From positions 62,001 to 126,000 of the IMG/VR virus record IMGVR_UViG_3300027782_000027: a DNA stretch of 64,000 nt; one strand, 5' to 3'. The notes beneath the pieces are model-generated. The model saw only the letters and a program-made list of their open reading frames with translations. It was not told the origin of the DNA and searched no databases. Both the position numbers and the translations under genes were made by a program. Shown here piece after piece: positions 3,946 to 48,958 of this stretch. Position 1 is the first letter of the stretch; each line of letters starts with the position of its first letter.

Positions 3946-3974
3946 TTGACAACTATGCTTTTGTGTGTTATTAT
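3946..3974 (+). promoter_or_regulatory. Sigma70-type promoter TTGACA-N17-TATTAT
   Basis: -35 at 3946-3951 and -10 at 3969-3974, upstream of ATG 4012. Confidence 0.7.
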
Positions 3975-3980
3975 TAATGT

Positions 3981-3987
3981 ATAAATA
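3981..3987 (-). promoter_or_regulatory. TATTTAT putative late promoter for bS21
   Basis: ATAAATA on the plus strand, ~40 nt upstream of the rpsU start. Confidence 0.6.
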
Positions 3988-4011
3988 AACGAAGATATGA
4001 AAAGGTTGTAA

Positions 4012-4476
4012 ATGAAAAAAGGAAAAAGTTGCTCTATCAAAGGGTATAAAAAAATAAAATGTTCTTATGGGACTGTGGATTCTAAAAATTTTAAATCAAT
4101 ATACTTAAACATTCAATCTTGGGTTGAACCCAAATCTATTGAGGACTCTTGGATAAGACTTGTGTCTTACTTTAATAAACAAATAAAAAATACTATTGGG
4201 GATTATATTGATGTGGAATTTTTTTATGACAATTTTATAGTTGATTTAGACTTACGAACTTCAGGAATTGCATTAAAGAAAAGGTCTTTTATGAATCTTG
4301 AAATTACTTTTTTTATTAAAAAACCTATGGATTTTAAATCTCTTGAAATAAAAAATTCACTTAAAAAAATTGTTAGTTGTTTAGAATCTGATATTTTTAA
4401 CAAATCTAATCATTTTAGTTTTCATTTAAGTAAAAACGATAAAATCAAAAAAGAAAGTAAAATAGAATTTGTATAG
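4012..4476 (+). CDS. Hypothetical protein
   Basis: 154-aa ORF with its own sigma70-type promoter. Confidence 0.7.
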   Translation: MKKGKSCSIKGYKKIKCSYGTVDSKNFKSIYLNIQSWVEPKSIEDSWIRLVSYFNKQIKNTIGDYIDVEFFYDNFIVDLDLRTSGIALKKRSFMNLEITFFIKKPMDFKSLEIKNSLKKIVSCLESDIFNKSNHFSFHLSKNDKIKKESKIEFV

Positions 4477-4483
4477 TATTTAT
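4477..4483 (+). promoter_or_regulatory. TATTTAT putative late promoter (protease)
   Basis: In the gap before ATG 4499. Confidence 0.65.
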
Positions 4484-4498
4484 CTATAAAAAGGTAAA

Positions 4499-5218
4499 AT
4501 GCAAAATTACAAAATATTAGGTCCAAAAGAGACAGGAAAAGGTATTTTAATTGAGATGGACGCAGGTTATGTTTCTCCAACAGAAAAACATAATCAAACA
4601 TTCTTACAAGAAAGTAAGGATTTTAAAGATTATTCTAAACCATTTGAATTTTATGCCGTTCTACAAAAATATAATACACCGAATAGAAACGGTAGAATAT
4701 ATCCTGAAAGAATTTTAAAAAGAGAGTCCGAAAATTATATAAAGAATTATATCGGTAAAAAAACCTCTTTATCTGAACTTAACCACCCTGAATCTTCATT
4801 AATAGATTTAGATAGAGTATCACATATGATTACAGAGATGTGGTGGGATGGTAATGTTCTATTAGGTAAATTGTTACTTCTAACTTCACCAGGGTTCCAT
4901 GAAAGAGGTATCGTATCAACAAAGGGTGACCAAGCGGCAAACCTATTAAGACTAGGTGTGACGTTAGGTATATCATCAAGAGGGGTAGGTTCCTTAAAAA
5001 AAGTAGGTGAACAAAATGAAGTTCAGGATGATTTTGAATTAATTTGTTTTGACTTGGTGTCATCACCATCAACACCAGGAGCTTATTTATTTACTGAACC
5101 TGATGGAAGATTTGCGTTTGAGGAAAACCTAAAAGAAGAAAATGATATGAAAGCTGCAAGAACAGTTAACAAATCGCTTGATTTAATGGGAAGACTTACC
5201 GATTATTTAGGAAAATAA
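4499..5218 (+). CDS. Prohead maturation protease (T4 gp21-like)
   Basis: NRNGRIYP, ELNHPES, LGISSRGVGS and FDLVSSPSTPGA motifs. Confidence 0.93.
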   Translation: MQNYKILGPKETGKGILIEMDAGYVSPTEKHNQTFLQESKDFKDYSKPFEFYAVLQKYNTPNRNGRIYPERILKRESENYIKNYIGKKTSLSELNHPESSLIDLDRVSHMITEMWWDGNVLLGKLLLLTSPGFHERGIVSTKGDQAANLLRLGVTLGISSRGVGSLKKVGEQNEVQDDFELICFDLVSSPSTPGAYLFTEPDGRFAFEENLKEENDMKAARTVNKSLDLMGRLTDYLGK

Positions 5219-5224
5219 ATAATT

Positions 5225-5440
5225 ATGGAAATGGACGAAAAATACTTTGTGGCTAAAATACAATACGATTTGCCAGATGAGAACACAGGAAAAATTAAAA
5301 AAGTAAGAGAAGAAAAACTTGTAAGAGGTTATTCTGTTACCGATGTTGAAGCTAAAGTTACTGAAGCTTACAAATCATTTAGTTATGATTGGAGAATCAC
5401 TTCAGTAAGTGAAAGTAAAATTGACGAAGTGTTTGAATAA
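5225..5440 (+). CDS. Small conserved protein, DUF4494-like
   Basis: YFVAKIQY...GKIKKVREEKLVRGYSVTDVEAKVTE resembles the recalled Bacteroidota DUF4494 pattern. Confidence 0.5.
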   Translation: MEMDEKYFVAKIQYDLPDENTGKIKKVREEKLVRGYSVTDVEAKVTEAYKSFSYDWRITSVSESKIDEVFE

Positions 5441-5462
5441 TCACAAAGTTTAAAAAAAATTT

Positions 5463-5489
5463 AAAAGGGGACATTTTGTCCCTTTTTTT
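5463..5489 (+). terminator. Rho-independent terminator
   Basis: Stem GGGACA/TGTCCC followed by a T-tract. Confidence 0.8.
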
Positions 5490-5531
5490 ATGCCAATTAT
5501 ATTAAAAAACTATTTTTTTAGAATATCGATA

Positions 5532-5538
5532 TATTTAT
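5532..5538 (+). promoter_or_regulatory. TATTTAT putative late promoter (scaffold and capsid)
   Basis: Lies after the terminator and before ATG 5557. Confidence 0.7.
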
Positions 5539-5556
5539 CAATAAAATAACGCACAA

Positions 5557-6951
5557 ATGGCAGAAAAAAACTTAGTTGAAGAGGCATTAATCCAAATACA
5601 AAATTTGGAAGAAGCTATCAATGAAAACGCAAAAGAAATACTTCATTCTACAATGAAAGAAGAAATTAGCGAATTAGTAAAAGAGTCTATGAAAAATGAG
5701 GCTGAAGAAGAAGATGAATTTGAAATCGAAGACGAGATTGAATCAGATGATGAATCAGAAGAAGAAGATGAGTCTGAAGAAGACGAATCGGAAGAAGAAG
5801 ACGAAGATTCTGAGGAAGGATTCGATATGATGGATTTATCTGACGAAGGTGACGAAGATGAAAATGAATTTGATGTTCAAGATTTATCTGACGAACCGAT
5901 GTCGACAGTTCTTAAAGCATTCAAACAAATGAAACCAACTGATTCTTTTGAAATCAAGAAAGAAGGTGATTTTATTCATTTAAAAGATGAAGAAGATGAA
6001 TACCTTATTCAAAACGGTTCAGAAGACGATGAGTTTGGTGAATTTGGTGAATCTCAAGAAGAAGAAACTGAAGAAATGGTTTATGAAATCGAAATGGATT
6101 CACTTGAAGAAGAAGAAACTGAAGAAATGGTTTACGAAATCGAAATGGATTCTAACGACTTTTCATTTGATGATGATGAAGAAGAAGAAGAATCTAAAGA
6201 AGAAGATTTCTATATGGAAGAAGAAATGAATCCTGTTATGGAAACATTTAAAGCAAAATTAGGTAACGGAGCCGCTAAAGTAGGTAATGCTAAAACAGCA
6301 TCTACTTTTAAGAAAACAAAAGGTGGTTTTAACGAAAAGAAAAAAGCCGTTAATCCAACTGCTCACACAGGAAAACCTAAATTTGAATTTAAAGAAGGTG
6401 ATGTGTTTGAAATGCCAAGTCAACGTGCTGAGAAATTCACTAAGGAAGAAGCTAAAGAAGCTGCACGTACTTATGGATTCGGTTCTAAAAAAGGACGTGG
6501 TTTGAGAAAAGCAATTACACCTAACAGAAATCTTACTTTTGAAAACCATGAAATCATGGAAGAAGTTGAAATGTTGAGAGCTAAAAATGAAGAGTATAGA
6601 AAAGCTTTAAATATGTTTAGAGATAAACTTAATGAAGTTGCGATATTCAATTCTAATCTTGCTTACGCTACAAGATTGTTCACAGAACATTCTACATCAA
6701 AACAAGAAAAAATTAACATTTTAAGAAGATTTGATTCAGCGGAATCCCTTAAAGAGTCTAAAGCCCTTTATAAAAATATCAAAGACGAATTATATATTGA
6801 CAACAATAAGAAATTCGTTAATGAGTCAATCGAAAGAGTTATTGAAAAAACTCCACAGTCAGGTTCAGCAGTTAATCTGATTGAATCTAAGACTTACGAG
6901 AATCCACAATTCTTGAGAATGAAAGACATTATGTCAAAAATAATAAAATAA
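5557..6951 (+). CDS. Prohead scaffold/core protein (gp22-like)
   Basis: Very acidic centre and coiled-coil C-terminus (LNEVAIFNSNLAYATRLF), directly before the capsid gene. Confidence 0.8.
   Translation: MAEKNLVEEALIQIQNLEEAINENAKEILHSTMKEEISELVKESMKNEAEEEDEFEIEDEIESDDESEEEDESEEDESEEEDEDSEEGFDMMDLSDEGDEDENEFDVQDLSDEPMSTVLKAFKQMKPTDSFEIKKEGDFIHLKDEEDEYLIQNGSEDDEFGEFGESQEEETEEMVYEIEMDSLEEEETEEMVYEIEMDSNDFSFDDDEEEEESKEEDFYMEEEMNPVMETFKAKLGNGAAKVGNAKTASTFKKTKGGFNEKKKAVNPTAHTGKPKFEFKEGDVFEMPSQRAEKFTKEEAKEAARTYGFGSKKGRGLRKAITPNRNLTFENHEIMEEVEMLRAKNEEYRKALNMFRDKLNEVAIFNSNLAYATRLFTEHSTSKQEKINILRRFDSAESLKESKALYKNIKDELYIDNNKKFVNESIERVIEKTPQSGSAVNLIESKTYENPQFLRMKDIMSKIIK
6058..6152 (+). repeat. 44-bp direct repeat with 51-bp period (EEETEEMVYEIEMDS x2)
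   Basis: Copies at 6058-6101 and 6109-6152 differ by one synonymous base. Confidence 0.9.
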
Positions 6952-6977
6952 ACTTAAAAATAAAAAACCTATAAAAA

Positions 6978-8867
6978 ATGGGAGCATTATTAGAAAGTGG
7001 ATTAGTTGGTAACATTGGTCTTAAGCACTTGAAAGTTATCAAAGAAGACACAGTAAACAAATGGGACAAATTAGGGTTCCTTGAAGGTCTTAAAGGCCAC
7101 CTAAAAGAAAATGTAGCACAATTGTATGAAAACCAAGCGTCACATTTGATTAACGAAGCATCTTCTACGGCAGATTCAGGTTCATTCGAGACTGTGGTAT
7201 TCCCTATCATCAGACGTGTGTTCTCTAAATTATTGTCTAACGAAATCGTTTCTGTACAAGCTATGAACTTACCAATCGGTAAATTGTTCTACTTCGTACC
7301 ACAAATCCAAGGTTATTCTGGTGGTTCAGCTATTAACGGATTAAACGTTACTTCTGGTGACCACTACCCGCCTGTAGGTTCTCCTGGAAACTATCCTGGA
7401 AGTCCTGACGCAGGTTATGGTTCAGGAACAGGAAGTGCTAACAACCCAACTTACGCGAAAAACCTTTATGATTTATTCTACGAAGGAACTGAGCCAGGTC
7501 TTAACCCAGCAGGTTTATTTGATTATTCTAAAGGACGTTTTGTAACACTAACAGGTTCATGTCCAACAGTTGCTTGGTCTGACGGAGCGTTAATTCCTTC
7601 AGGTTATACTGTACAAGGTGGTTCTAACACTGAATTTAGAAAAATTATTGTAGCACTTTCAGGTTTAACTTCTGCAGGTAATGGTAAGTTAATTGGACCT
7701 GACGGACAAGAGCAGGATACTGAATCTTTCTTATCTGGATTGGTTCTTTATACTAATAACGCAACTGTTGCGTCTAACTTAGGTACTAATACATATACAC
7801 CACTTTTATACCGTGTTGTAACTCAAAAGTATGGTCAATCAATATACGGTCCGAACTATACTAGTACTCAGGCAACTTTTGGTAGTACTTTCGCAAGTAC
7901 AACTCAAGGTAACGGTGGTTACTATGATAACGTATGTAATACACAAGGTTATATCTATTTAGAGATTGACACTCAAGTTCCGGCATGTATTGCTTGTGGA
8001 CAGTCAACTCCTGATGGATATTCTGGAGCAACATTAACTGCTACACAATGGAGTGGTTCTTCTGCTAATACTAACATCCAAGCAGCTTGGAGACGTTACG
8101 AAGAGTTAGAATTTGAAGATAAAATTGGTGAAGTTTCTTTTGACCTTGAGTCAGTAACTGTATCTGTTACAGAAAGAAAATTAAGAGCACAATGGTCTCC
8201 AGAAATGGCACAAGACGTTGCAGCGTTCCACAACATCGATGCTGAAGCTGAATTAACAGCTTTATTATCTGAACAAGTGGCGGCTGAAATTGACCGTGAA
8301 ATCTTACGTGACTTACGTAAAGGTGCAGCGTGGACATTACGTTGGGATTACAACGGATGGAAGCGTCTGAACAACCAATCAACTCCTTACACTCAAAAGG
8401 ACTGGAACCAAACGTTGATTACTGCAATCAACCAAATTTCAGCTCAAATCCACAAGTCTACTTTAAGAGGTGGAGCTAACTGGATTGTTGTATCTTCTGA
8501 AATCAGTGCAATCTTTGATGACTTGGAATACTTCCACGTATCAAATGCGGCCCCTGAGCAGGACCAATTCAACATGGGTATCGAGAGAGTTGGTACATTA
8601 AGTGGTCGTTACCAAGTATACCGTGACCCATACTTCCCAGCTAACACTGTGTTGATTGGTCATAAAGGTACTTCTTTATTGGATACTGGTTACATCTACG
8701 CTCCATACGTACCGTTACAATTAACTCCAACAATGTATAACCCATTCAACTTTACTCCTATCAAGGGTATCATGACAAGATACGCGAAGAAGATGGTGAA
8801 CAATCGCTTCTATGGTCGTATCATCGTTGATGGTGTTCGTACATTCGATTTGAATGAATTAAGATAA
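6978..8867 (+). CDS. Major capsid protein (T4 gp23-like) with enlarged insertion domain
   Basis: VSVQAMNLPIGKLFY, TERKLRAQWSPEMAQD, IDAEAELTALLSEQVAAEIDREIL and GYIYAPYVPL motifs. Confidence 0.95.
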   Translation: MGALLESGLVGNIGLKHLKVIKEDTVNKWDKLGFLEGLKGHLKENVAQLYENQASHLINEASSTADSGSFETVVFPIIRRVFSKLLSNEIVSVQAMNLPIGKLFYFVPQIQGYSGGSAINGLNVTSGDHYPPVGSPGNYPGSPDAGYGSGTGSANNPTYAKNLYDLFYEGTEPGLNPAGLFDYSKGRFVTLTGSCPTVAWSDGALIPSGYTVQGGSNTEFRKIIVALSGLTSAGNGKLIGPDGQEQDTESFLSGLVLYTNNATVASNLGTNTYTPLLYRVVTQKYGQSIYGPNYTSTQATFGSTFASTTQGNGGYYDNVCNTQGYIYLEIDTQVPACIACGQSTPDGYSGATLTATQWSGSSANTNIQAAWRRYEELEFEDKIGEVSFDLESVTVSVTERKLRAQWSPEMAQDVAAFHNIDAEAELTALLSEQVAAEIDREILRDLRKGAAWTLRWDYNGWKRLNNQSTPYTQKDWNQTLITAINQISAQIHKSTLRGGANWIVVSSEISAIFDDLEYFHVSNAAPEQDQFNMGIERVGTLSGRYQVYRDPYFPANTVLIGHKGTSLLDTGYIYAPYVPLQLTPTMYNPFNFTPIKGIMTRYAKKMVNNRFYGRIIVDGVRTFDLNELR

Positions 8868-8886
8868 TCTTATCTTAATAGATAAT

Positions 8887-8917
8887 AAAAAAGGGACAAG
8901 AAATTGTCCCTTTTTTT
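8887..8917. terminator. Bidirectional Rho-independent terminator
   Basis: A-tract, GGGACAA-GAAA-TTGTCCC, T7, between convergent genes. Confidence 0.85.
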
Positions 8918-9170
8918 ATTTAGATAAAAGTCTAAGTGATTTAGATAATACTTCAGATTCTTCTAATGAATATACTCCCTTTAAGAATGAGTATTTAACG
9001 GATTCAATTAAACATAATTTTGCCTGTTCGTCAGTTAGATTAGAGATAAAATCATTTAAACCATCTGATGATTTATATTCAATAGAATTAAATAAGATAC
9101 CACCATCATTTAAATTGTTTAATTCATTTAAAATTTCTGATTTTAATTTGTCTTCTTCTGAATGTTCCAT
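8916..9170 (-). CDS. Hypothetical protein
   Basis: 84-aa ORF filling the gap; no recognisable motif. Confidence 0.6.
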   Translation of the reverse strand: MEHSEEDKLKSEILNELNNLNDGGILFNSIEYKSSDGLNDFISNLTDEQAKLCLIESVKYSFLKGVYSLEESEVLSKSLRLLSK

Positions 9171-9179
9171 AGTATTAGA

Positions 9180-9186
9180 TATTTAT
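9180..9186 (+). promoter_or_regulatory. TATTTAT putative late promoter
   Basis: Upstream of ATG 9212. Confidence 0.6.
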
Positions 9187-9211
9187 GTAAATATAAACAA
9201 TTTTTTTGGTT

Positions 9212-10191: not shown

Positions 10192-10201
10192 GATTCTAAT
10201 A

Positions 10202-10606
10202 TTAACAATTTATTTTATTATAAATATTGTCAAGAGAATGATTAATTTGACTTTCTAATTCTTTTTCAATTTCCATTGCTCTATATTCCATTTCTCTACG
10301 GAACGCACTAACCAATTTATCCCATTGAGTTTTATTTAATTTAATAAAATAACTGTATGTATGATTAGTTACAGTAACTTGTCCACCATCCATTGTAACA
10401 AAAATACCTAATTTATCATTACGGATATATTTCTTATCTGATATGGGTGCGATTATGAGTTCAGAATCTTCCGAATGAATGAGTTTACGACATATGGTGG
10501 AACATTTCCTCACGTTAGACATATAGATGTCAAATTCGGTATCCTTTCGGTCTAATCTACGTAAGTATAGACGATATTTAATCCACAGTTTTTTTATTAT
10601 AGTCAT
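10202..10606 (-). CDS. Hypothetical early protein
   Basis: 134-aa ORF preceded by a Bacteroidota-type promoter. Confidence 0.7.
   Translation of the reverse strand: MTIIKKLWIKYRLYLRRLDRKDTEFDIYMSNVRKCSTICRKLIHSEDSELIIAPISDKKYIRNDKLGIFVTMDGGQVTVTNHTYSYFIKLNKTQWDKLVSAFRREMEYRAMEIEKELESQINHSLDNIYNKINC
10220..10226 (-). promoter_or_regulatory. TATTTAT putative late promoter
   Basis: Lies in the 3' end of the 10202 ORF, upstream of the 10191 start. Confidence 0.5.
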
Positions 10607-10625
10607 GTCATTTATGATTTGACTA

Positions 10626-10656
10626 CAAATATACTACGATTTTTTAATAATCCAAA
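10626..10656 (-). promoter_or_regulatory. Bacteroidota housekeeping-type promoter TTTG-N19-TATATTTG
   Basis: -33 TTTG at 10656-10653, 19-nt spacer, -7 TAnnTTTG at 10633-10626, upstream of ATG 10606. Confidence 0.7.
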
Positions 10657-13208: not shown

Positions 13209-13215
13209 ATAAATA
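13209..13215 (-). promoter_or_regulatory. TATTTAT putative late promoter
   Basis: In the gap upstream of the 13196 start. Confidence 0.65.
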
Positions 13216-17337: not shown

Positions 17338-17344
17338 ATAAATA
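17338..17344 (-). promoter_or_regulatory. TATTTAT putative late promoter
   Basis: 4 nt upstream of the 17333 start. Confidence 0.6.
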
Positions 17345-17360: not shown

Positions 17361-18098
17361 TTACTCTTCCTTAACATCTATTAACGAAGAGTAAATTTTC
17401 TTGAATTTTTTAATTGAAGCTCTAATCTCTTTAGTTGACATATTTGTCATTTCACGAATAGATAATAAAATTACATTTTTATTAAATTTATTATTATCTG
17501 TTGCCGGAAATATCGTTTCGTAATTGTCTAAAATATCGATAAGTGCAAAACCTAATTTTAATTCATTATCATTTAATTCATCTTCTTCTATTGTTGTTTT
17601 AATATAATCTTTTAATATCGGAATTACATTATATTCTTGAATAGGTTCAATTTCTAAATAATAAATCATTTCAGGTCTATTTTCTAAATCACTTGAAATA
17701 TCCTCATATGAAATTTTTCTATTTGTTTCTTTTTGGTCTTTTAATATTTGGCCCATAAGATAATTCTTACAAATAGTTCCAAAATATGAGTAAGCTTTCT
17801 TTTCTTTTGAAGGACTAAATTTTTCAATTTTTGTCATCAAAAAAGAATGTGTGTCGGTATGAATTTCAGTAAAATTCATATCTTTTCTATACAATTTATA
17901 TCTTCTTATTATCGAAGATATCATCTTATCTAAAGGGAATCTTAAAAATTCATTATAAATTTTATTTTTTTCCTCAGAAGTAGATGCGGTTAGAAATAAT
18001 CTAACAGCATTTTCCTCTCTTATATCAAAATAATTTTCTGTGGCCGGTTTTTTCTTCTTAGTTAAAGAATCTTGAACAGACGTTGCACTTAAAATCAT
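17361..18098 (-). CDS. Phage sigma factor (T4 gp55-like late sigma, tentative)
   Basis: Sigma region-2-like segment IEKFSPSKEKKAYSYFGTICKNYL (compare gp55 F...AYFT.I..NAF). Confidence 0.6.
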   Translation of the reverse strand: MILSATSVQDSLTKKKKPATENYFDIREENAVRLFLTASTSEEKNKIYNEFLRFPLDKMISSIIRRYKLYRKDMNFTEIHTDTHSFLMTKIEKFSPSKEKKAYSYFGTICKNYLMGQILKDQKETNRKISYEDISSDLENRPEMIYYLEIEPIQEYNVIPILKDYIKTTIEEDELNDNELKLGFALIDILDNYETIFPATDNNKFNKNVILLSIREMTNMSTKEIRASIKKFKKIYSSLIDVKEE

Positions 18099-33710: not shown

Positions 33711-34405
33711 AAATTTGTTAATTTAATTAAAACTTTTATTAATACCTCAACATCTTTTTCACAATAATCTTGTATCTCTTGGTATTTGTTTTCATTCCAA
33801 AATGCGTTATGGACTTTATTACCTGTTACCTCCATATTTTTAGGACTTTCAATACCAAGAGATACACACATTAATTCTAATGAACTGATAGCTCCAAATT
33901 GTCCGTATTGCCAAATTTCTTTTGTGTCAATCGCTTTAATTTCCCACGGTTTAGTATCGTAAGACGGTAAGATAGATGATGGTAAAATACCATTTATTAA
34001 CATTCTTTTTGCCAATACAGGAATATCAAAATTCTTAAGGTTATGTCCGCAAAGAATAAAACCTAATTTGTCAACACGATTTAATAGTGTGTTAGCGTCT
34101 TTAAGTAATACTTTTTCGTCTGAGTTAAAGAAACTTTGTTTTTTAATATCACCCTTTGGGTCAACAAATCCTACTGAAACACAAACAATTTTAGAAAATT
34201 CAGGAACTAATGCCGCACGGTTAACAAAAATTTCGTCCAAACTTAATTCACTATCTTCAGGAAACCTTTTTTTAAACCAATCTAAATAATTAATAAATTG
34301 AAAATGAAGTTCAGGATAATCCTTTTTGAAATTTTCATAATTACTTGAAACTCCTACAGTTTCAATGTCAATAAATAAGATTTTGTGTAATGGATGCTTT
34401 ATCAT
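33707..34405 (-). CDS. Stand-alone PolB-type 3'-5' exonuclease (DEDDy)
   Basis: FIDIET, GHNLKNFDIP and YCEKDV motifs. Confidence 0.85.
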   Translation of the reverse strand: MIKHPLHKILFIDIETVGVSSNYENFKKDYPELHFQFINYLDWFKKRFPEDSELSLDEIFVNRAALVPEFSKIVCVSVGFVDPKGDIKKQSFFNSDEKVLLKDANTLLNRVDKLGFILCGHNLKNFDIPVLAKRMLINGILPSSILPSYDTKPWEIKAIDTKEIWQYGQFGAISSLELMCVSLGIESPKNMEVTGNKVHNAFWNENKYQEIQDYCEKDVEVLIKVLIKLTNL

Positions 34406-35616
34406 ACGATTGATTTATAAAATTCTGCTCTTGTTTTTGTTACGACATCTAAACTATAGTGTTTAGAAACATGTTCATATAGTCTTTCACCCATATCAAT
34501 TCTCATATTTGGATTTTGGACTAATTTCTTAACATATTTTGCCCAATCACTGTGATTTCTTGCGTCATCGACTAGTAATGCGTTCCCATCAGTAAACTCA
34601 CCATTCTTCATTGCGTGTTTTAAGTCAATTGTATAAGGTCCGTAATTAGTTGCAATTAACGCTTTCTTATAAAAACCTGCTTCAATAACTTTAAGTTGTG
34701 ATTTTACTTTGTTAAACATATGTTGTTTAATTGGTGCCAAAGATATATCAAATTTAGAGTAACTACGGGCGTAAGATGTTACGGGTTTTGTCCAAACTCT
34801 TCTATAAGGTTGGTTTTCCTCATTTTCATATGGTGTTTGAACAAATAATTCTAAATGGTTTTTATATTCAGGTGTAACGATTGAATAATTATTTGTAAAT
34901 ATTTTTTCGTAATCATACCATACGGTTTCGTGTGGTTTAATTGGTCTTCTTGTTTGTTCACCTGTCTGTTGGTTAATTTCTGTCATCATACCGCGAGTAT
35001 CAAAACCACAAACAACAAACTGTAAATTTTTCTGAATATCAGAAAGTTTAGATACCATACCATCAAGTAACATCAAATCATGTAGGTGTGAAGAACCTCC
35101 TAACCACCCAACTCTTACCAAGTCAGATTCTTCAGTCGGTTCATTAAATTGAGCCTCTTTATGGTCAATTGCGTTAGGAAAAATTACAACATTTTTATTA
35201 TGTTTTTTTATTTCATCAGCAAATAACTCAGTTGTTGTAGTTACATATTTTGCTACTTTTAAATTCGCAACAATTTTTTCGTGTATTTTTTCTTGAACGA
35301 TTAGTTGATGAAGTGGGTGTTCTTTACCAGGTAACCAATAGTCATCTAAATCACATACTGTAATAATACCTAAAGCGTTAAGAATTGGAACTATTTGTAC
35401 TGACTTATCCATATCTTGACCAAGAGAACGATGGTAATGTATAATTTGGTAGTTTTTAAAATAATTTAAATTAGTTAAATCAGGATTGAATTCAATATCA
35501 ATGTGAAAATCGTCTCCATATAGAGTTTGTAAATGTGTATGTGGAGTTATTGACCTAAATCTACCGACACCAGTAGTATCAGACGGGACTACTAAAACTT
35601 TTATCTTTTCTTTCAT
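34402..35616 (-). CDS. GT-B fold glycosyltransferase
   Basis: DLDDYW, VGWLGGSSHLHDL, DISLAP and KSQLKVIEAG motifs. Confidence 0.85.
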   Translation of the reverse strand: MKEKIKVLVVPSDTTGVGRFRSITPHTHLQTLYGDDFHIDIEFNPDLTNLNYFKNYQIIHYHRSLGQDMDKSVQIVPILNALGIITVCDLDDYWLPGKEHPLHQLIVQEKIHEKIVANLKVAKYVTTTTELFADEIKKHNKNVVIFPNAIDHKEAQFNEPTEESDLVRVGWLGGSSHLHDLMLLDGMVSKLSDIQKNLQFVVCGFDTRGMMTEINQQTGEQTRRPIKPHETVWYDYEKIFTNNYSIVTPEYKNHLELFVQTPYENEENQPYRRVWTKPVTSYARSYSKFDISLAPIKQHMFNKVKSQLKVIEAGFYKKALIATNYGPYTIDLKHAMKNGEFTDGNALLVDDARNHSDWAKYVKKLVQNPNMRIDMGERLYEHVSKHYSLDVVTKTRAEFYKSIV

Positions 35617-35623
35617 AAGTTAA

Positions 35624-35652
35624 ATGATAATCAAAAATAAAAGATATTTCAA
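35624..35652 (-). promoter_or_regulatory. Sigma70-type promoter TTGAAA-N17-TATCAT heading the glycosylation operon
   Basis: -35 at 35652-35647 and -10 at 35629-35624, just upstream of ATG 35616. Confidence 0.6.
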
Positions 35653-35660
35653 CAATAATA

Positions 35661-35684
35661 AAAAAAAAGTCCCATAAGGGACTT
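35661..35684 (-). terminator. Rho-independent terminator
   Basis: AAGTCCC-loop-GGGACTT followed by a T-tract on the minus strand, after the 35705 stop. Confidence 0.75.
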
Positions 35685-35704
35685 CTATAATTTTTTAGGT
35701 TTTT

Positions 35705-38256: not shown

Positions 38257-38263
38257 ATAAATA
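38257..38263 (-). promoter_or_regulatory. TATTTAT putative late promoter (divergent pair)
   Basis: Upstream of the 38242 start. Confidence 0.65.
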
Positions 38264-38275: not shown

Positions 38276-38282
38276 TATTTAT
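38276..38282 (+). promoter_or_regulatory. TATTTAT putative late promoter (divergent pair)
   Basis: 7 nt before ATG 38290. Confidence 0.65.
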
Positions 38283-41221: not shown

Positions 41222-41250
41222 TTGACTTATAATATTTAATTGGTTAATCT
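41222..41250 (+). promoter_or_regulatory. Sigma70-type promoter TTGACT-N17-TAATCT (DNA polymerase)
   Basis: -35 at 41222-41227 and -10 at 41245-41250. Confidence 0.65.
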
Positions 41251-41257
41251 TACCACA

Positions 41258-41285
41258 TAAGGTAAATTCCGACCTTAATTCGGAA
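41258..41285 (+). promoter_or_regulatory. Putative H-type RNA pseudoknot in the polymerase 5' leader
   Basis: UAAGGU (41258-63) pairs with ACCUUA (41272-77); UUCCG (41267-71) pairs with CGGAA (41281-85). Confidence 0.5.
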
Positions 41286-41308
41286 GCAAATACACCATTT
41301 TAAATTTT

Positions 41309-44089: not shown

Positions 44090-44091
44090 TG

Positions 44092-44130
44092 AAAAAAGGA
44101 ATATGTTAAAAATACATATTCCTTTTTTTT
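44092..44130. terminator. Bidirectional terminator
   Basis: AAAAAAGGAATATGT-loop-ACATATTCCTTTTTT between convergent genes. Confidence 0.85.
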
Positions 44131-44464
44131 ATGATTGTTTTAATCCGTCTGAGGAAACTACAAACCATGAACCAAATGCATAATATAGTTCAACACAAGC
44201 GCCTTTTTCAATATTAATTTCACTATACTCTTCATCAATCAAACCTTCAATGGGTTTGATTTTTGTATTTGTAAGTGCTTTAACAATTACGTGGTCAGTA
44301 TTGTTATGATTTAAAATGATTTTAATTTCATCTAATTCTTTTGTAATAACTACTGATTCTCCTTCTGTTGTATAACTTTCATCTGAAACCATACATACTT
44401 CAGATGTTGTTAAAACTTGGTTCCCGATAACACGTCTCATCGGAATTGATTTTTGTATACTCAT
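44129..44464 (-). CDS. Hypothetical small beta-rich virion protein
   Basis: 111-aa ORF downstream of the neck gene. Confidence 0.7.
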   Translation of the reverse strand: MSIQKSIPMRRVIGNQVLTTSEVCMVSDESYTTEGESVVITKELDEIKIILNHNNTDHVIVKALTNTKIKPIEGLIDEEYSEINIEKGACVELYYAFGSWFVVSSDGLKQS

Positions 44465-44468
44465 AAAA

Positions 44469-45599: not shown

Positions 45600-45615
45600 G
45601 AAGTGATATTTTTAT

Positions 45616-45622
45616 ATAAATA
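45616..45622 (-). promoter_or_regulatory. TATTTAT putative late promoter (neck)
   Basis: Upstream of the 45599 start. Confidence 0.65.
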
Positions 45623-47128
45623 TCAATTCACAGTATAAATTAAATCTTGTGTTGGGATTTTAAACATACTTGAACTAAAAGCGACAGTTTTGTTTTTAAA
45701 AATATAAACTTCTTTATTAATATTTGAGAAAATTAATAAGTCGGTATTAAACTTTTTGACAAAACCTTTAATTTTAATATTATAGAAACCGTCAATTACT
45801 TCCATACTTAAAATTGGTTTAACTTGAGCGTTTTGTATTTTGTTATCAAAATTCACTGTTAAATCAGTTCCCGCAAAATCTTCTTTTGAACCTAAACTAC
45901 CAACTACAACTGCAGTTCCTTCACCAAATTCTTGATTGATTTTTTTTGCGACATACTCCTCAAGTTGACCACCTTTGTCATGTGTTCTTTTTAAAAGTTT
46001 CATAATCTTATCAAGAGTTTTAGACCCTTTAAAAATTCTTTCACCAAAAAACTCCATATAAGAACAAAATTTATTTATTTCTTCTACTTGTTGTAAAGGT
46101 GTTACCCCAATAAAATTTAATGTGGGTTTATTTAGTTTCGTAAGGACTGCGTTTAAATCATCAACTAAAATCTTAAACCCAATATAATTTGTATTTAATT
46201 TATTAATTACTGAACGACCTGGTTGTTCTAAGTCGTAAATACCTGAAGATGAACCTTCGGAGTGTTGATTGTTTTCATGCCACTTATCAGACAAAACCGT
46301 TTTCAACGTATTATCAATACATCGTCTGTAAGTCCAAAGAACATTTTTGTTGTTACTAAAAATATCTGAGTAATCCGACACGTTTTCGTATAACAGTTTT
46401 TTTGGTGAAGTTGATTCGTTCAATTTTTTTTCAGTTTTTGATTTGTATAACTCATTAACAAATTCCCAGTTGATTACTTCCCAAAAATTTTCAATATATT
46501 CGTCTCTTTTGTTTTGGTATTTTAAATAATATGCGTGTTCCCATAAATCCAAACCTAACAACGGAAAACCACCTTGATTAATTATATTCATAAGTGGGTT
46601 GTCTTGATTTGAGGTGGACATTACTTTTAATCTACCTGTATCGGTTAGAACTAACCAACACCATCCTGAACCAAATCGTTTTTTTGATATTTCTTCAAAT
46701 TTAGTTTTGAAATTACGATACGTCCCAAATTGTTTAACAATTTTTTCAAACACTTCACCACTTGGTTTTTGCGGTGTGGGTGATAACATCTTCCAAAACA
46801 ATGCGTGGTTAAATGCTCCACCTGCGTTATTTCTTATTGTTGTATTATACTTTGATATCTGTTTAACAATATTCTCCAATTCAACATCACCATAATCTTT
46901 TTTACGAAGAGCTGAATTTAATTTTTTAACATACCCCTTGTAATGTTTTTGATAATGAAATTTCATTGTCTCAGGGTCAATAAATCTTCTTAACGATGCG
47001 TATCCATACGGTAGTTTATCAATACCAATGGTTTTCATTTCATTAATAAAAAATTTGGTTTCAGGTTGAGTTTCCTCACCTAACAAACGACTAACTAATG
47101 ACTCTGATACTATATTTAACGATTTCAT
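45623..47128 (-). CDS. Mn/Fe superoxide dismutase fused to a ~260-aa C-terminal domain
   Basis: LPYGY...FHYQKHY, NAGGAFNHALFW and GLDLWEHAYYLKYQN, with all four metal ligands present; long extra C-terminus. Confidence 0.9.
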   Translation of the reverse strand: MKSLNIVSESLVSRLLGEETQPETKFFINEMKTIGIDKLPYGYASLRRFIDPETMKFHYQKHYKGYVKKLNSALRKKDYGDVELENIVKQISKYNTTIRNNAGGAFNHALFWKMLSPTPQKPSGEVFEKIVKQFGTYRNFKTKFEEISKKRFGSGWCWLVLTDTGRLKVMSTSNQDNPLMNIINQGGFPLLGLDLWEHAYYLKYQNKRDEYIENFWEVINWEFVNELYKSKTEKKLNESTSPKKLLYENVSDYSDIFSNNKNVLWTYRRCIDNTLKTVLSDKWHENNQHSEGSSSGIYDLEQPGRSVINKLNTNYIGFKILVDDLNAVLTKLNKPTLNFIGVTPLQQVEEINKFCSYMEFFGERIFKGSKTLDKIMKLLKRTHDKGGQLEEYVAKKINQEFGEGTAVVVGSLGSKEDFAGTDLTVNFDNKIQNAQVKPILSMEVIDGFYNIKIKGFVKKFNTDLLIFSNINKEVYIFKNKTVAFSSSMFKIPTQDLIYTVN

Positions 47129-47133
47129 TAATT

Positions 47134-47140
47134 ATAAATA
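47134..47140 (-). promoter_or_regulatory. TATTTAT putative late promoter (SOD fusion)
   Basis: 5 nt upstream of the 47128 start. Confidence 0.6.
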
Positions 47141-47141
47141 C

Positions 47142-48902
47142 TTACTTACTATTGATTTCGTTAAGTATTTGTTCAACAATATCTACAGAACTTTCGTCAA
47201 TATCACCCATAACCGTACCAATTATCTGTTTCTTCCTTGTAAGAATATCATAAATAACTCCTTCAATAGAGTTATCAAATAATGGATAGTATATTGAAAC
47301 TGAATTTTTTTGTCCATATCTATACGCTCGGTCTTCGGCTTGAGCATGTTCAGCGGGTACAAACGATAAGTCATTCATAATAACGGCCTCACCAGCGGTA
47401 AGTGTCAATCCAACCCCCGCAGCTTTCATGTTACCACAAAAAACTTGTATTTTATCACTCTCTTGGAACTTGTCAACCGCATCCTGTCTTGCGGGTTTTG
47501 ATGTTGACCCATCTAAATAAACAGACTTCTTACCAAAATGTTCGTGTATCTTTTTTAAAGGTTCAGTGAAGTTACTGAAGATAATAACTTTTTTACCCTG
47601 TTCAATAATGTTCTCAGCAAGTTCAATTGTTATAGATATTTTTTCTTCAGCAATTACCTGTCTTACTTTCATAAGTTTTGAAAACTGAACTGAGAGAGAC
47701 CTTGACTCATCTTGTCTATTATTATACCAATCATAATACTCACCCATCAACCCTTCATACAATCTTGATTTTAAACGAAGATAAACAGGTGTGATAATTT
47801 TTTCAGGTAAATCTAAAACTTCAGTCTTTAATCTTCTTAATATTTGACGTGAAGTTCTTTCTCTTAATTCTTCTAAATTAGATGCTCCTGTCACATTCCA
47901 AATCTTTTTACCACCAACTCTAAACTGATACCCACCACAATATCTAATTGCATATGCTTGCCAGTTTTGACTCACAGGACTATCAATAAGTTTTAAGATA
48001 TTATAATAATTCATGGGACGAGAAGTCATTGGTGTCCCCGTTAATAACCAAAGTTTTTTAATGTTTTTGGTTACATCCATTATAATCTTTGTTCTTTGAG
48101 CCTGAGCATTTGAAACATAATGGGCTTCATCAATAATAACCAAATCAAATTTTGAATTAAGAATTGTTGAACCATTTTTATCTTTTGGGTCGTGAAAGTT
48201 TTTCAGGATATCGTAATTTACAATTACGTAATCCGACAATTCAAACTTTTTACCTTCACAGATATAAACTGATTTGTCGGTATAGTTTTTAATTTCTCTT
48301 TCCCAATTTATTTTAAGAGATGCCGGACATATGATTAAAATTCTATTTGTACCGCTTTCTAATGAAGCAATCACCGCAGAAGTGGTCTTACCAAGTCCCA
48401 TGTCATCCGCCAAAATGAACTTATCGTTCTTTAATAATTTTTCTATCGCTTCTTTTTGATGAGCAAGTGGTGGTCGGTTTTCATATTTTGTATAATCAAC
48501 ATCAACCAAGTTTTCGGTGTATTGTTTAATAACCGCAGCTCTCGGTATCCAAAAATCATGGATAGTCTCTCCACTAAAAATTTTACCCCAAATGTGATAT
48601 GACTTATCTTTTTCAACTAAAATTTTTTCAACGTATATTTTATCAGGTTCCTTAATAAAAGGATTGTCAGCAACAAGTTTTTGTGAAAAGTATGAATCAA
48701 TCTCAACCCATTTTTTAGCAACTTTTGGAACTACTGAATTGTAGTCAATAACATAATCACATTGAGCTCTTGTTGGAAGATACTTTTTATTTGAATCAAT
48801 CTGTTTTTTTAATTTGAGGATATAGTTATTTGACCCCTGATAATTTTCAAGAATAGATATTGCTTGTTGTTCAATACTTAAATGTCCTGTAGAAGTTGTC
48901 AA
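47142..48902 (-). CDS. SNF2-family (SMARCAL1/HARP-like) helicase
   Basis: LADDMGLGKT, IIDEAH, LTGTP, GVGLTL and QAEDRAYRYGQ motifs; TTG start. Confidence 0.93.
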   Translation of the reverse strand: MTTSTGHLSIEQQAISILENYQGSNNYILKLKKQIDSNKKYLPTRAQCDYVIDYNSVVPKVAKKWVEIDSYFSQKLVADNPFIKEPDKIYVEKILVEKDKSYHIWGKIFSGETIHDFWIPRAAVIKQYTENLVDVDYTKYENRPPLAHQKEAIEKLLKNDKFILADDMGLGKTTSAVIASLESGTNRILIICPASLKINWEREIKNYTDKSVYICEGKKFELSDYVIVNYDILKNFHDPKDKNGSTILNSKFDLVIIDEAHYVSNAQAQRTKIIMDVTKNIKKLWLLTGTPMTSRPMNYYNILKLIDSPVSQNWQAYAIRYCGGYQFRVGGKKIWNVTGASNLEELRERTSRQILRRLKTEVLDLPEKIITPVYLRLKSRLYEGLMGEYYDWYNNRQDESRSLSVQFSKLMKVRQVIAEEKISITIELAENIIEQGKKVIIFSNFTEPLKKIHEHFGKKSVYLDGSTSKPARQDAVDKFQESDKIQVFCGNMKAAGVGLTLTAGEAVIMNDLSFVPAEHAQAEDRAYRYGQKNSVSIYYPLFDNSIEGVIYDILTRKKQIIGTVMGDIDESSVDIVEQILNEINSK

Positions 48903-48929
48903 ATTATTTTAATTAACTATACAACTATA

Positions 48930-48958
48930 ATAATAATCAAAAAAGAAATATTTATCAA
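48930..48958 (-). promoter_or_regulatory. Sigma70-type promoter TTGATA-N17-TATTAT (helicase)
   Basis: -35 at 48958-48953 and -10 at 48935-48930. Confidence 0.6.
48949..48955 (+). promoter_or_regulatory. TATTTAT putative late promoter
   Basis: 4 nt before ATG 48960. Confidence 0.6.

What the first reader, a model, noticed from the sequence alone, without database searches (positions are those of the whole stretch)
3946..48958. Three promoter classes: enterobacterial-type sigma70 promoters in a phage with Bacteroidota host signals
Seen: four -35/N17/-10 promoters (TTGACA-TATTAT at 3946, TTGAAA-TATCAT at 35652, TTGACT-TAATCT at 41222, TTGATA-TATTAT at 48958) head the non-late genes. There is also one perfect Bacteroidota TTTG-N19-TAnnTTTG promoter at 10656 and the TATTTAT late class. 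Established: the Bacteroidota housekeeping sigma uses -33/-7 elements, not TTGACA/TATAAT. Inference: an early (host sigma), middle (phage sigma70-like, probably encoded outside this window) and late (gp55-like) cascade.
Basis: partly seen in the sequence, partly recalled or inferred. Interest (0 to 1): 0.6.

Follow-up and report, generated by a model that had tools for sequence, protein, structure and literature searches.

The report
Three promoter classes, two phage sigmas

Summary
Judged by hexamer match alone they are no better than chance. Position and conservation make them real: the -35 box and the 17-nt spacing are kept in 39 of 40 (site 1), 19 of 25 (site 2) and about 50 (site 3) distinct orthologous upstream regions.

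Across four whole related genomes three classes are enriched over shuffles:
- E: TTTG-N19/20-TAnnTTTG.
- M: TTGA(C/T/A)n-N17-TAnnTTT(not G).
- L: TATTTAT, with no -35 box.

E and M are discrete, not a continuum (Fisher P = 1e-6 over 41 ortholog groups).

M heads the genes for DNA polymerase, helicase, primase, SSB-recombinase and methylase. It also heads a 23-gene operon that ends in a sigma-like gene (window 17361-18098), whose best structural match is T4 gp55. L heads the portal, protease, sheath and tube genes. E heads small ORFs and the operon of a second sigma, 266 aa, encoded outside the window; this sigma carries Bacteroidota sigma-A signatures, not enterobacterial ones.

The cascade is therefore plausible but inferred. 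No transcription start site data exist.

The parts
3946..3976 (+). M-class promoter (site 1): TTGACA-N17-TATTATTA. Predicted start near A3981. Heads the 154-aa gene 4012-4476.
   Evidence: TTGAC[AT]-N16/17-TAnnnT is kept in 39 of 40 distinct orthologous upstream regions. A terminator lies just upstream in this genome and in relatives.
35622..35652 (-). M-class promoter (site 2): TTGAAA-N17-TATCATTT. The box starts 13 nt before the ATG at 35616, a leaderless geometry. Heads a 23-gene operon, 35616 down to 17361.
   Evidence: 19 of 25 orthologous regions keep TTGAnn-N16/17-TAnnnT (17 nt in 17 of them), mostly as TATCTTTT plus 4 nt plus ATG; the same arrangement is found in four genomes.
41222..41252 (+). 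M-class promoter (site 3): TTGACT-N17-TAATCTTA. Predicted start near A41257. Heads DNA polymerase B, 41309-44089.
   Evidence: The TTGAC/TTGAT box is kept across about 50 distinct relatives down to 65% protein identity. In relatives the downstream box reads TAAACT, TAnnTTTG or TATATTTAT.
48928..48958 (-). M-class promoter (site 4): TTGATA-N17-TATTATAG. Heads the SNF2-family helicase 47142-48902. Its -35 overlaps the L box of the divergent gene.
   Evidence: The -10 (TATTAT or TATATTTA) is kept at N17 in 24 relatives. TTGATA is the reverse complement of TATCAA in the sequence TATTTATCAAT-ATG.
10626..10656 (-). E-class (host sigma-A type) promoter: TTTG-N19-TATATTTG. Heads gene 10202-10606.
   Evidence: TATATTTG is kept in G001 and G002; class consensus from 90 sites.
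17361..18098 (-). Gene for P0001, a 245-aa divergent sigma factor with a gp55-like sigma-2 domain and a sigma-4-like C-terminal domain. It is the last gene of the operon headed by site 2.
   Evidence: PHROG 234 'late sigma transcription factor', E 8.7e-4, with 18 of 71 family members matching it. A profile of the family finds SigA (E 0.002) and gp55 (E 0.18) in the PDB. AF2 model pLDDT 90.3. The best of 48,161 chains is T4 gp55, 7d7d_F, Z 10.9, and the top 32 rows are all sigma factors.
34402..35616 (-). First gene of the site-2 operon, a 404-aa glycosyltransferase-like protein.
   Evidence: weak Glyco_trans_1 matches.
35665..35686 (-). Intrinsic terminator just upstream of site 2.
   Evidence: The hairpin plus T-run is kept in relatives.
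3799..3825 (+). Intrinsic terminator after the portal/3051 unit, upstream of site 1.
41259..41297 (+). Conserved structured RNA in the 5' leader of the DNA polymerase gene. It begins 2 nt after the predicted start of site 3.
   Evidence: Seven pairs in two helices; all 273 cells are paired across 39 sequences; five pairs show changes on both sides; 0 of 500 shuffles reach this. No Rfam family matches.
1177..1183 (+). L box TATTTAT, 15 nt before the portal gene at 1192.
3028..3034 (+). L box, 23 nt before gene 3051.
4477..4483 (+). L box, 22 nt before the prohead protease gene at 4499.
5532..5538 (+). L box, 25 nt before gene 5557. The major head protein gene at 6978 follows with no box of its own.
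   Evidence: The box is kept in four genomes.
9180..9186 (+). L box before gene 9206.
   Evidence: The box is kept in four genomes.
10220..10226 (-). L box before gene 10191.
13209..13215 (-). L box before gene 13196.
17338..17344 (-). L box, 11 nt before gene 17333 (leaderless geometry), directly downstream of the sigma-like gene.
   Evidence: The box is kept in four genomes.
38257..38263 (-). L box before gene 38242, one of a divergent pair.
38276..38282 (+). L box, 14 nt before gene 38290 (974 aa).
45616..45622 (-). L box before gene 45599.
47134..47140 (-). L box, 12 nt before the SOD-fusion gene at 47128.
48949..48955 (+). L box, 11 nt before gene 48960. It overlaps the -35 of site 4 on the other strand.
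50912..50918 (+). L box before the tail sheath gene at 50954.
   Evidence: The box is kept in four genomes.
54226..54232 (+). L box, 11 nt before gene 54237, preceded by a terminator hairpin.
55128..55134 (+). L box before the tail tube gene at 55169.
56655..56661 (+). L box before gene 56675.
58690..58696 (+). L box before the 1611-aa gene at 58708.

Best explanation
The window comes from a freshwater jumbo phage (a 240.8 kb record; a complete relative is 293.9 kb) whose host is most likely a member of Bacteroidota. The phage encodes no RNA polymerase and drives the host core enzyme from three discrete promoter classes.

- E class: TTTG-N19/20-TAnnTTTG. This is the ordinary Bacteroidota sigma-A type. 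It heads small ORFs and the operon of a 266-aa phage sigma that resembles the host sigma-A.
It heads replication, recombination and DNA-modification genes and sugar genes. It also heads a long operon whose last gene is a second, gp55-like sigma (P0001).
- L class: aTATTTAT(a), with an A four to five nt downstream and no -35 box. It heads the virion genes and many small genes.

Shown: the motifs, their enrichment, their conservation, the discreteness of E and M, the functions of the genes they head, the two sigma genes, and the promoter class in front of each sigma gene.

Inferred: host sigma-A reads E; the phage sigma-A-like factor reads M; P0001 reads L. This would be a sigma relay of the SPO1/T4 kind.

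Many E, M and L boxes sit exactly 12 (11-13) nt before the ATG. If the box occupies -12 to -5 as it does in the hosts, those mRNAs are leaderless.
For: Enrichment over dinucleotide shuffles:
- L: 57 against 13.5.
- E (two-block form): 8 against 0.2.
- M: 4 against 0.2 in G000, 12 against 0.4 in G002 and 6 against 0.2 in G001.

L class:
- The logo from 83 sites shows no -35 box and an A at +11 in 69 of 83.
- The boxes are kept in place upstream of orthologs in four genomes.

E class: the logo from 90 sites shows TTTG 19-20 nt upstream, and 24 of 90 boxes start exactly 12 nt before the ATG.

E and M are discrete:
- TTGA with a non-G box end, 24 instances; TTG(not A) with a G end, 28; mixed, 7; P = 2e-9.
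- Collapsed to 41 ortholog groups the counts are 16, 20 and 5, P = 1.2e-6.

Conservation of the four sites.

Functions:
- M heads PolB and the SNF2 helicase, and SSB, primase, a DNA methyltransferase and a rhamnose epimerase.
- L heads portal, protease and the operon holding the major head protein, sheath and tube.

The sigma-A-like gene:
- Pfam regions 1.2, 2 and 4.
- 66-77% identical in three relatives.
- It shares FISYAVWWIRQSILQ and LT(K/R)ERVRQIKEKA with FCB sigma-A.
- Its nearest cellular relatives are almost all from the FCB group.
- Its operon is headed by TTTG-N19/20-TAnnTTTG in three genomes.

P0001. It is the last gene examined of a tightly packed cluster of about 23-26 genes (later genes were not checked), and that cluster is headed by an M promoter in all four genomes.

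No phage RNA polymerase was found.

Shine-Dalgarno-like 4-mers are depleted: 5.8% of genes against 10% of random windows.

Literature: the host -7 box lies at -12 to -5, and leaderless mRNAs make up only 3.7-5.5% in the hosts (PMC9723704, PMC7366714).
Against: - No transcription start site or expression data exist. Only DNA metagenome runs hold this phage.
- The assignment of sigmas to classes rests on gene order and analogy alone.
- The phage sigma-A-like factor keeps nearly the same DNA-reading residues as host sigma-A, so a change of specificity is not evident from sequence.
- P0001 has a sigma-4-like domain, whereas L promoters show no -35 box.
- Sequence-level support for P0001 as a sigma is weak: hhalign probability 0.1, and E 0.002 against SigA and 0.18 against gp55.
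- No T4-type sliding clamp was found.
- Site 1 heads a gene inside the head module.
- My gene calls come from a simple ORF picker, so some start codons, and hence some distances, may be wrong.
Confidence: 0.55

Rival explanations
1. There is one sigma specificity, not two. Both E and M are read by host sigma-A, or interchangeably by host sigma-A and its phage look-alike. A strong TTGACA-type -35 simply compensates for a -7 box that lacks its G. The phage sigma-A-like protein would then serve as a replacement or decoy after host shut-off, not as a middle-specific factor.
For: - The recognition helices of regions 2.4 and 4.2 are almost identical in phage and host sigmas.
- E and M share the same geometry, with the G of TTG 19-20 nt before TA.
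- A few mixed promoters exist, such as TTGACA-N17-TATATTTG at G000 196248 and TTGACA-N17-TACATTTG in G001.
Against: - The two features are strongly anti-correlated rather than graded.
- M heads a coherent functional set of replication and recombination genes.
- The phage sigma differs from the host's in region 1.2, in region 3.0 and by a deletion of about 20 residues in region 3.
- It is a conserved core gene.
Confidence: 0.28
2. The roles of the two phage sigmas are swapped, or P0001 is not the late factor. P0001, which has sigma-2 and sigma-4-like domains, would read the two-block M promoters. The TATTTAT class would be read by the sigma-A-like factor or by host sigma-A helped by an unknown phage co-factor.
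For: - P0001 has a C-terminal domain that resembles sigma region 4 (Z about 5), and M has a -35 box whereas L has none.
- TATTTAT shares T-A, T and T positions with TAnnTTTG when aligned from the box start.
Against: - P0001 lies in an M-headed operon in four genomes, so on this reading it would have to switch on its own promoter.
- The sigma-A-like gene lies behind an early-type promoter, so if it read L it would turn on virion genes at once.
Confidence: 0.12
3. The four sites are chance matches in AT-rich intergenic DNA and have no function.
For: - Generic sigma-70 scans find no excess.
- Most of the best matches lie inside genes.
- Site 3 matches only 8 of 12 positions.
Against: - The -35 box and the exact 17-nt spacing are kept while spacer and flanks diverge, in 39 of 40, 19 of 25 and about 50 relatives.
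- The refined motif is enriched 20- to 30-fold over shuffles.
- Terminators lie directly upstream.
- A conserved structured leader begins 2 nt after the predicted start of site 3.
Confidence: 0.04

Closest known systems
Bacteroidota sigma-A (sigma-ABfr) promoters: -33 TTTG and -7 TAnnTTTG
   Same: The E class matches this consensus, its spacing and its register (PMC7366714, PMC9723704). The M class uses the same register for its downstream box.
   Different: M replaces TTTG with TTGA(C/T)(A/T), fixes the spacer at 17 nt and drops the final G. Far more boxes sit at a leaderless distance than the 3.7-5.5% reported for host mRNAs.
Canonical sigma-70 promoters (TTGACA-N17-TATAAT) of Enterobacteria, Bacillus and others
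   Same: The -35 hexamer and the 17-nt spacer of the M class.
   Different: The downstream element is TAnnTTT(A/T), not TATAAT. The candidate reader is an FCB-type sigma. The generic consensus is not enriched in this genome.
Bacillus phage SPO1 sigma cascade (host sigma-A, then gp28, then gp33/34); from my own knowledge
   Same: The relay logic: each tier's promoter class heads the gene for the next tier's sigma.
   Different: The host is from a different phylum, the sigma proteins are unrelated in sequence, the motifs differ, and none of the steps has been shown experimentally here.
Phage T4 late transcription: gp55 sigma, TATAAATA, gp33, gp45 clamp (the gp55 structure is PDB 7d7d; the promoter details are from my own knowledge)
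   Same: A -35-less late box of 7-8 AT bases centred near -10. P0001's best structural match is gp55, and it matches PHROG 234.
   Different: The box reads TATTTAT(A) on the coding strand, which is the reverse complement of the T4 box. P0001 has an additional sigma-4-like domain. No T4-type clamp was found. gp33 was not searched for.
'Moraphages', freshwater jumbo phages of 200-307 kb with predicted Bacteroidota hosts (PMC12619734)
   Same: Habitat, size range, predicted host phylum, the lack of an RNA polymerase, and core genes for a sigma factor, PhoH, primase, PolB, SSB and several glycosyltransferases.
   Different: I could not compare sequences, so membership is likely but not shown. That paper did not analyse promoters.

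Membership tests
Canonical sigma-70-type promoter | -35 hexamer close to TTGACA | tested here: met
   TTGACA, TTGAAA, TTGACT and TTGATA at the four sites. TTGACA or TTGACT in 39 of 40 orthologs of site 1.
Canonical sigma-70-type promoter | Spacer of 17+-1 nt | tested here: met
   17 nt at all four sites, and in 21 of 24 class members.
Canonical sigma-70-type promoter | -10 hexamer close to TATAAT | tested here: not met
   The class consensus is TAnnTTT(A/T). Across orthologs the boxes read TATTATTA, TAAATTTA, TAGATTTA and TATCTTTT. Site 3 matches 3 of 6. The generic consensus is not enriched in this genome.
Canonical sigma-70-type promoter | Transcription starts 5-9 nt after the -10 | not testable with these tools
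   No RNA run holds the phage. Indirect support only: conserved leaders begin at the predicted starts of sites 1 and 3.
Bacteroidota sigma-A -33/-7 promoter | TAnnTTTG box | tested here: met
   Met for the E class: site 10626-10633 and 90 sites in four genomes. Not met for the M class, whose boxes end in A or T.
Bacteroidota sigma-A -33/-7 promoter | TTTG about 19-21 nt upstream of the box | tested here: met
   E-class logo: T in 66 of 90 and 59 of 90 sites, followed by G, at N19-20. The two-block form is found 8 times against 0.2 expected.
T4-type late promoter with a gp55-family sigma | AT-rich box near -10 with no -35 element | tested here: met
   L logo from 83 sites: information is found only in aTATTTAT and in the A at +11.
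T4-type late promoter with a gp55-family sigma | Box sequence TATAAATA | tested here: not met
   The coding-strand motif is TATTTAT(A).
T4-type late promoter with a gp55-family sigma | A gp55 homolog is encoded | tested here: inconclusive
   P0001: PHROG 234 at E 8.7e-4, with 18 of 71 family members matching. Profile against gp55, E 0.18. Best fold match is gp55, Z 10.9, rmsd 5.6, 119 residues aligned. However, other sigma-2 domains score within 1-2 Z units, and there is an additional sigma-4-like domain.
T4-type late promoter with a gp55-family sigma | Sliding clamp (gp45) and co-activator (gp33) | tested here: not met
   Pfam DNA_PPF finds nothing in the 82%-complete record. gp33 was not searched for.
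Group 1-3 sigma-70 family (the 266-aa phage sigma, outside the window) | Regions 1.2, 2 and 4 present | tested here: met
   Pfam Sigma70_r2 at 63.9 bits, r4 at 59.2 bits and r1_2 at 24.9 bits. PDB SigA, E 1e-46. About 20 residues of region 3 are missing.
'Moraphage' lineage | Shared core genes and phylogenetic placement | not tested
   Only the gene content and habitat described in PMC12619734 were compared. No sequences from that study were at hand.

The most novel reading that the evidence does not exclude
A widespread lineage of freshwater Bacteroidota jumbo phages runs a two-step relay of its own sigma factors on the host core polymerase. In the first step a sigma-A look-alike has shifted specificity from TTTG / TAnnTTTG to TTGAca / TAnnTTT(not G). 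That would be a natural switch between needing G at -5 and needing A in the -35 box. In the second step a gp55-like sigma reads TATTTAT. A third or more of the transcripts would be leaderless, in a phylum where leaderless mRNAs are rare.
Probability: 0.35. Interest if true: 0.7.

Novelty: new variant of a known kind. Interest (0 to 1): 0.58.

Why it matters
Almost nothing is known about how phages of Bacteroidota, other than the crAss-like ones, time their genes. The hosts' unusual promoters (-33/-7 boxes, no Shine-Dalgarno) make knowledge from E. coli and Bacillus phages hard to transfer.

Here an uncultured but very common lake phage lineage is involved: more than 595 IMG/VR contigs carry the gp55-like sigma. 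It yields a complete regulatory map that can be tested directly:
- three motif classes with known target genes;
- two phage sigma genes, each behind the promoter class of the preceding tier;
- a clean pair of promoter variants, E against M, that differ in two features.

That pair gives a direct handle on what the final G of the Bacteroidota -7 box and the bases after TTG do in promoter recognition. The motifs can also be used to annotate transcription units, and to predict hosts, in related metagenomic phages.

Tried and rejected
- Megablast of the polymerase region against GenBank phages found nothing. By protein, the nearest are Salinibacter phage polymerases at 22% identity, so no annotated close relative exists.
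- A search for RNA sequencing runs found only DNA metagenomes kept as contigs. I therefore did not use read laying, and no start site could be mapped.
- Pfam searches of the genome for RNA polymerase beta, T7-type polymerase, ECF-type region 4 and the T4 clamp were all negative.
- For P0001: phmmer and a shallow profile against the PDB gave nothing. Pfam gave nothing. hhalign against a sigma-A alignment gave probability 0.1, although in the right register. The first AF2 model (pLDDT 67) gave only middling Z scores. A deeper alignment taken from the 1.84-billion-protein profile search was needed.
- I considered that E and M form one continuum. This was rejected by the 2x2 tests.
- I considered that TATAAATA at 3984-3991 is a T4-like late box. 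This was rejected: it lies in the conserved first bases of the site-1 transcript.
- Rfam found no known RNA family in the window.

Full report
WHAT THE WINDOW IS

The window is bases 62001-126000 of a 240,759-bp IMG/VR virus record, 82% complete by CheckV, about 31% G+C. No GenBank phage is close. Megablast finds nothing, and the family-B DNA polymerase is only 22% identical to those of Salinibacter phages.

The lineage is nevertheless common in IMG/VR:
- 179 contigs encode a polymerase 65-99% identical.
- More than 595 contigs encode the sigma-like protein described below.

Public runs that hold the sequence are all freshwater or lake DNA metagenomes. I fetched three long relatives whole: G001 at 222.8 kb, G002 at 293.9 kb (100% complete) and G004 at 190.6 kb.

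The window's genes:
- A head module: portal 1192-3027, prohead protease 4499-5218, major head protein 6978-8867.
- A tail module: sheath 50954-54169, tube 55169-55657, baseplate hub 55752-56504.
- DNA polymerase B, 41309-44089.
- An SNF2-family helicase, 47142-48902 (-).
- A superoxide dismutase fusion, 45623-47128 (-).
- An 18-kb minus-strand cluster, 35616 down to 17361, of glycosyltransferase, sugar-epimerase and PhoH genes.

CHECKING THE OBSERVATION

Sites 35652 and 48958, and the Bacteroidota-type site at 10656, are on the minus strand.

Taken only as matches to TTGACA-N16-18-TATAAT, the sites are unremarkable:
- The scan tool finds 89 such sites in 1-20000 against 104.9+-10.5 in shuffles, and 95 against 90.9+-10.1 in 34000-52000.
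- Genome-wide, 20 of the 24 matches at 11/12 or better lie inside my called genes. One of the 20 is site 3946 itself, under a doubtful 56-aa ORF call, and another is a perfect 12/12 at window 61187 inside a called ORF.
- In upstream regions, matches at 10/12 or better number 12 against 7.9+-2.9.
- Site 41222 matches only 8 of 12 positions.

What makes the sites real is position and conservation.
- Site 1: 39 of 40 distinct orthologous upstream sequences, at 59-100% protein identity, keep TTGACA or TTGACT. A spacer of 17 nt (16 in some) follows, then TAnnnT, while spacer and flanks diverge. A terminator hairpin lies directly before the -35 box in several lineages.
- Site 2: 19 of 25 orthologs keep TTGA(A/T)n-N16/17-TAT(C/T/A)(T/A)T (17 nt in 17 of them), preceded by a conserved terminator.
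- Site 3: the TTGAC or TTGAT box is kept in about 50 distinct relatives, down to 65% polymerase identity.
- Site 4: the -10 (TATTAT or TATATTTA) is kept at N17 in 24 relatives. Its -35, TTGATA, is also the reverse complement of part of the TATTTAT box of the divergent gene at 48960, so that half of the site has two possible explanations.

THREE CLASSES, DEFINED WITHOUT PRIOR ASSUMPTIONS

K-mer enrichment in the 125 oriented upstream regions of the genome (from 113 intergenic gaps) picks out two signals: TATTTAT (64 occurrences, 15.7-fold) and TATATTTG / TATCTTTG (up to 17-fold).

L class.
- There are 83 TATTTAT boxes within 45 nt of start codons.
- The logo holds information only in aTATTTAT(a) and in an A four nt after the box (69 of 83). 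There is no -35 or -33 signal.
- Orthologous genes in all four genomes keep the box at the same place.

E class.
- There are 90 TAnnTTTG boxes in the four genomes.
- The logo shows TTTG 19-20 nt upstream and T after the final G.
- This is the published Bacteroidota sigma-A consensus: -7 box at -12 to -5 and a TTTG near -33 (PMC7366714, PMC9723704).

M class.
- Of 41 intergenic TTGAC occurrences, about 22 are followed at exactly N17 by TA, and then by TAnnTTT(A/T) or TAnn(A/T)TTG.

Against dinucleotide shuffles of the upstream regions, all three classes are enriched in G000, G001 and G002:
- L: 57 against 13.5.
- Two-block E: 8 against 0.2.
- TTGAC[AT]-N17-TAnnnT: 4 against 0.2 in G000, 12 against 0.4 in G002 and 6 against 0.2 in G001.
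In the most distant relative, G004, the strict M form (0 against 0.1) and single-box TAnnTTTG (7 against 6.6) are not enriched, though L and two-block E are.

E and M are two things, not the ends of one scale. I took the TAnnTTTN boxes that have TTG 19-21 nt upstream:
- TTGA goes with a box that does not end in G (24 instances).
- TTG followed by a base other than A goes with a box ending in G (28 instances).
- Only 7 instances are mixed; Fisher P = 2e-9.
- Collapsing orthologs into 41 groups gives 16, 20 and 5, P = 1.2e-6.

WHAT EACH CLASS HEADS

M heads:
- DNA polymerase and the SNF2 helicase.
- An SSB / UvsX-like recombinase / exonuclease row, the primase, a DNA methyltransferase and a dTDP-rhamnose epimerase, all outside the window.
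- The long sugar/PhoH operon.
- The unknown 154-aa gene 4012-4476. This gene sits between portal and protease but is insulated by a terminator.

L heads portal, protease, the operon holding the major head protein, sheath, tube and other tail genes, the SOD fusion and many small ORFs.

E heads small ORFs, mostly in the genome arms, and the operon of the phage sigma.

THE TWO PHAGE SIGMAS

There is exactly one strong match, at G000 201399-202199. It is 266 aa, with Pfam regions 1.2, 2 and 4, and is 66-77% identical in three relatives.

This sigma is not enterobacterial in type.
- Its region 2.4 (FISYAVWWIRQSILQ) and region 4.2 (LTKERVRQIKEKA) match the FCB-group sigma-A. The Salmonella/E. coli forms are FSTYATWWIRQAITR and VTRERIRQIEAKA.
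- Its best cellular relatives, at 38-43% identity, are almost all Bacteroidota, Ignavibacteria, Marinimicrobia or Rhodothermales.
- It differs from host sigma-A in region 1.2, in region 3.0 and by a deletion of about 20 residues in region 3.
- Its two-gene operon lies behind TTTG-N19/20-TAnnTTTG in G000, G001 and G002.

The second sigma is inside the window: P0001, 17361-18098 (-), 245 aa.
- Sequence evidence is weak but consistent. PHROG 234 'late sigma transcription factor' matches at E 8.7e-4, and 18 of 71 diverse family members match it with no rival family. Pfam Sigma70_r2 matches at E 0.028. A family profile finds SigA (E 0.002-0.005) and T4 gp55 (E 0.18) in the PDB.
- The AF2 model built on the deep alignment has pLDDT 90.3.
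- Of 48,161 representative chains the best structural match is T4 gp55 (7d7d_F: Z 10.9, rmsd 5.6, 119 residues). The next 31 rows are all sigma factors. Residues 152-245 resemble sigma region 4 (Z about 5).
- In all four genomes the gene is the last one examined in a tightly packed cluster of about 23-26 genes (I did not check genes beyond it). The first gene of that cluster is preceded by an M promoter.

No phage RNA polymerase was found.

MOST LIKELY MECHANISM

Host sigma-A holoenzyme reads E, and so makes the phage sigma-A-like factor. That factor redirects the core enzyme to M, switching on replication and recombination genes and, at the end of the long operon, P0001. P0001 then directs the core enzyme to the -35-less TATTTAT boxes of the virion genes.

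The chain follows from which promoter class precedes which sigma gene, and from the gp55 analogy. None of the recognition steps has been shown.

The main rival is that host sigma-A, or either sigma, reads both E and M, because the DNA-reading helices are so alike.

HOST

The following all point to Bacteroidota, or at least the FCB group:
- E promoters of Bacteroidota type.
- The kinship of the phage sigma.
- Depletion of Shine-Dalgarno-like words (5.8% of genes against 10% of random windows), with A at -3 in 60% of genes.
- The lake habitat.

A recently described lineage, the 'moraphages', resembles this phage in the following ways (PMC12619734):
- freshwater habitat and genome size of 200-307 kb;
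- Bacteroidota hosts predicted;
- core genes for a sigma factor, PhoH, primase, PolB and SSB, plus several glycosyltransferases;
- no RNA polymerase.
It is probably the same group or a sister group, but I could not compare sequences. That paper does not analyse promoters.

NOVELTY AND VERDICT

Sigma relays in phages are classical, and Bacteroidota promoters are known. What is new:
- a discrete hybrid class, with a TTGACA-type -35, a fixed 17-nt spacer and a G-less -7 box;
- the TATTTAT class;
- two phage sigmas placed in relay order;
- the high share of boxes at leaderless distance, in a common uncultured lineage.

I rate this a new variant of a known kind, with interest 0.58. The cascade idea is plausible, and two of its predictions came true. 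The 'enterobacterial-type' label should be dropped.

Noticed in passing
window 41259-41297 (+): A conserved structured RNA lies in the 5' leader of the DNA polymerase gene: an outer 3-bp helix (GGT/ACC, changing to GAC/GTC) and an inner 4-bp helix around a variable loop. All 273 cells are paired across 39 diverse sequences, and five of the seven pairs show compensatory changes. No Rfam family matches. By analogy with T4 gp43 it could be a translational operator (the analogy is from my own knowledge).
   Followed up: yes
whole genome; in the window e.g. 17338, 47134, 48949, 54226 and 35631: Many E, M and L boxes start exactly 11-13 nt before the ATG: 24 of 90 E boxes at exactly 12, and 29 of 83 L boxes at 11-13. 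If the box occupies -12 to -5, these mRNAs are leaderless. The Bacteroidota hosts are reported to have only 3.7-5.5% leaderless mRNAs.
   Followed up: partly
window 3995-4011 (+): A conserved mini-ORF of 3-4 codons (ATG...TAA) abuts or overlaps the start codon of gene 4012 in nearly all relatives. Before it comes a conserved ATAAATAAAC at the predicted 5' end of the transcript. This may be translational coupling.
   Followed up: partly
window 17361-35616 (-): An 18-kb, 23-gene, tightly packed operon of glycosyltransferase-like, nucleotide-sugar epimerase, dTDP-4-dehydrorhamnose epimerase and PhoH-like genes, with lower G+C (26-29%). Its layout is conserved in four genomes. Whether it modifies DNA, the virion or the host surface is unknown.
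   Followed up: partly
window 45623-47128 (-): A 501-aa protein with a complete Fe/Mn superoxide dismutase (residues 36-226) fused to about 275 residues of unknown function. It lies behind an L box at leaderless distance.
   Followed up: no
window 61187-61215 (+): A perfect 12/12 TTGACA-N17-TATAAT lies inside a called ORF, which by its coordinates is the 1611-aa tail-region gene. It is a reminder that consensus matches alone mean little in this AT-rich genome.
   Followed up: no
G000 50464-50856 (-) and 47205-47279 (+), outside the window: ARAGORN calls a tmRNA-like gene (tag AKLSTLGLIRTEEVSVA) and a single tRNA-Arg(TCT). The tmRNA call was not verified.
   Followed up: no
G000 2500-11500 (locus L414), outside the window: A run of small genes in alternating orientation has near-identical upstream sequences ending in TATTTAT 12-13 nt before the ATG. 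This is a multi-copy small-gene family with palindromic two-way L boxes (TATTTATAAATA).
   Followed up: no
window 36279-36671 (-): A 130-aa protein with a borderline WYL-domain match (21.1 bits, cut-off 21.8). It may be a ligand-sensing regulator, and it lies just upstream of the site-2 terminator.
   Followed up: no
upstream of DNA polymerase in distant relatives (e.g. L067, L070, L062, L041): A recurring TGTTGTTGA / TTGTTGTTAAT motif overlaps or precedes the -35 box, and site 2 in the window has TTGTTGAAA. It could be an extended -35 element or the site of an activator.
   Followed up: no
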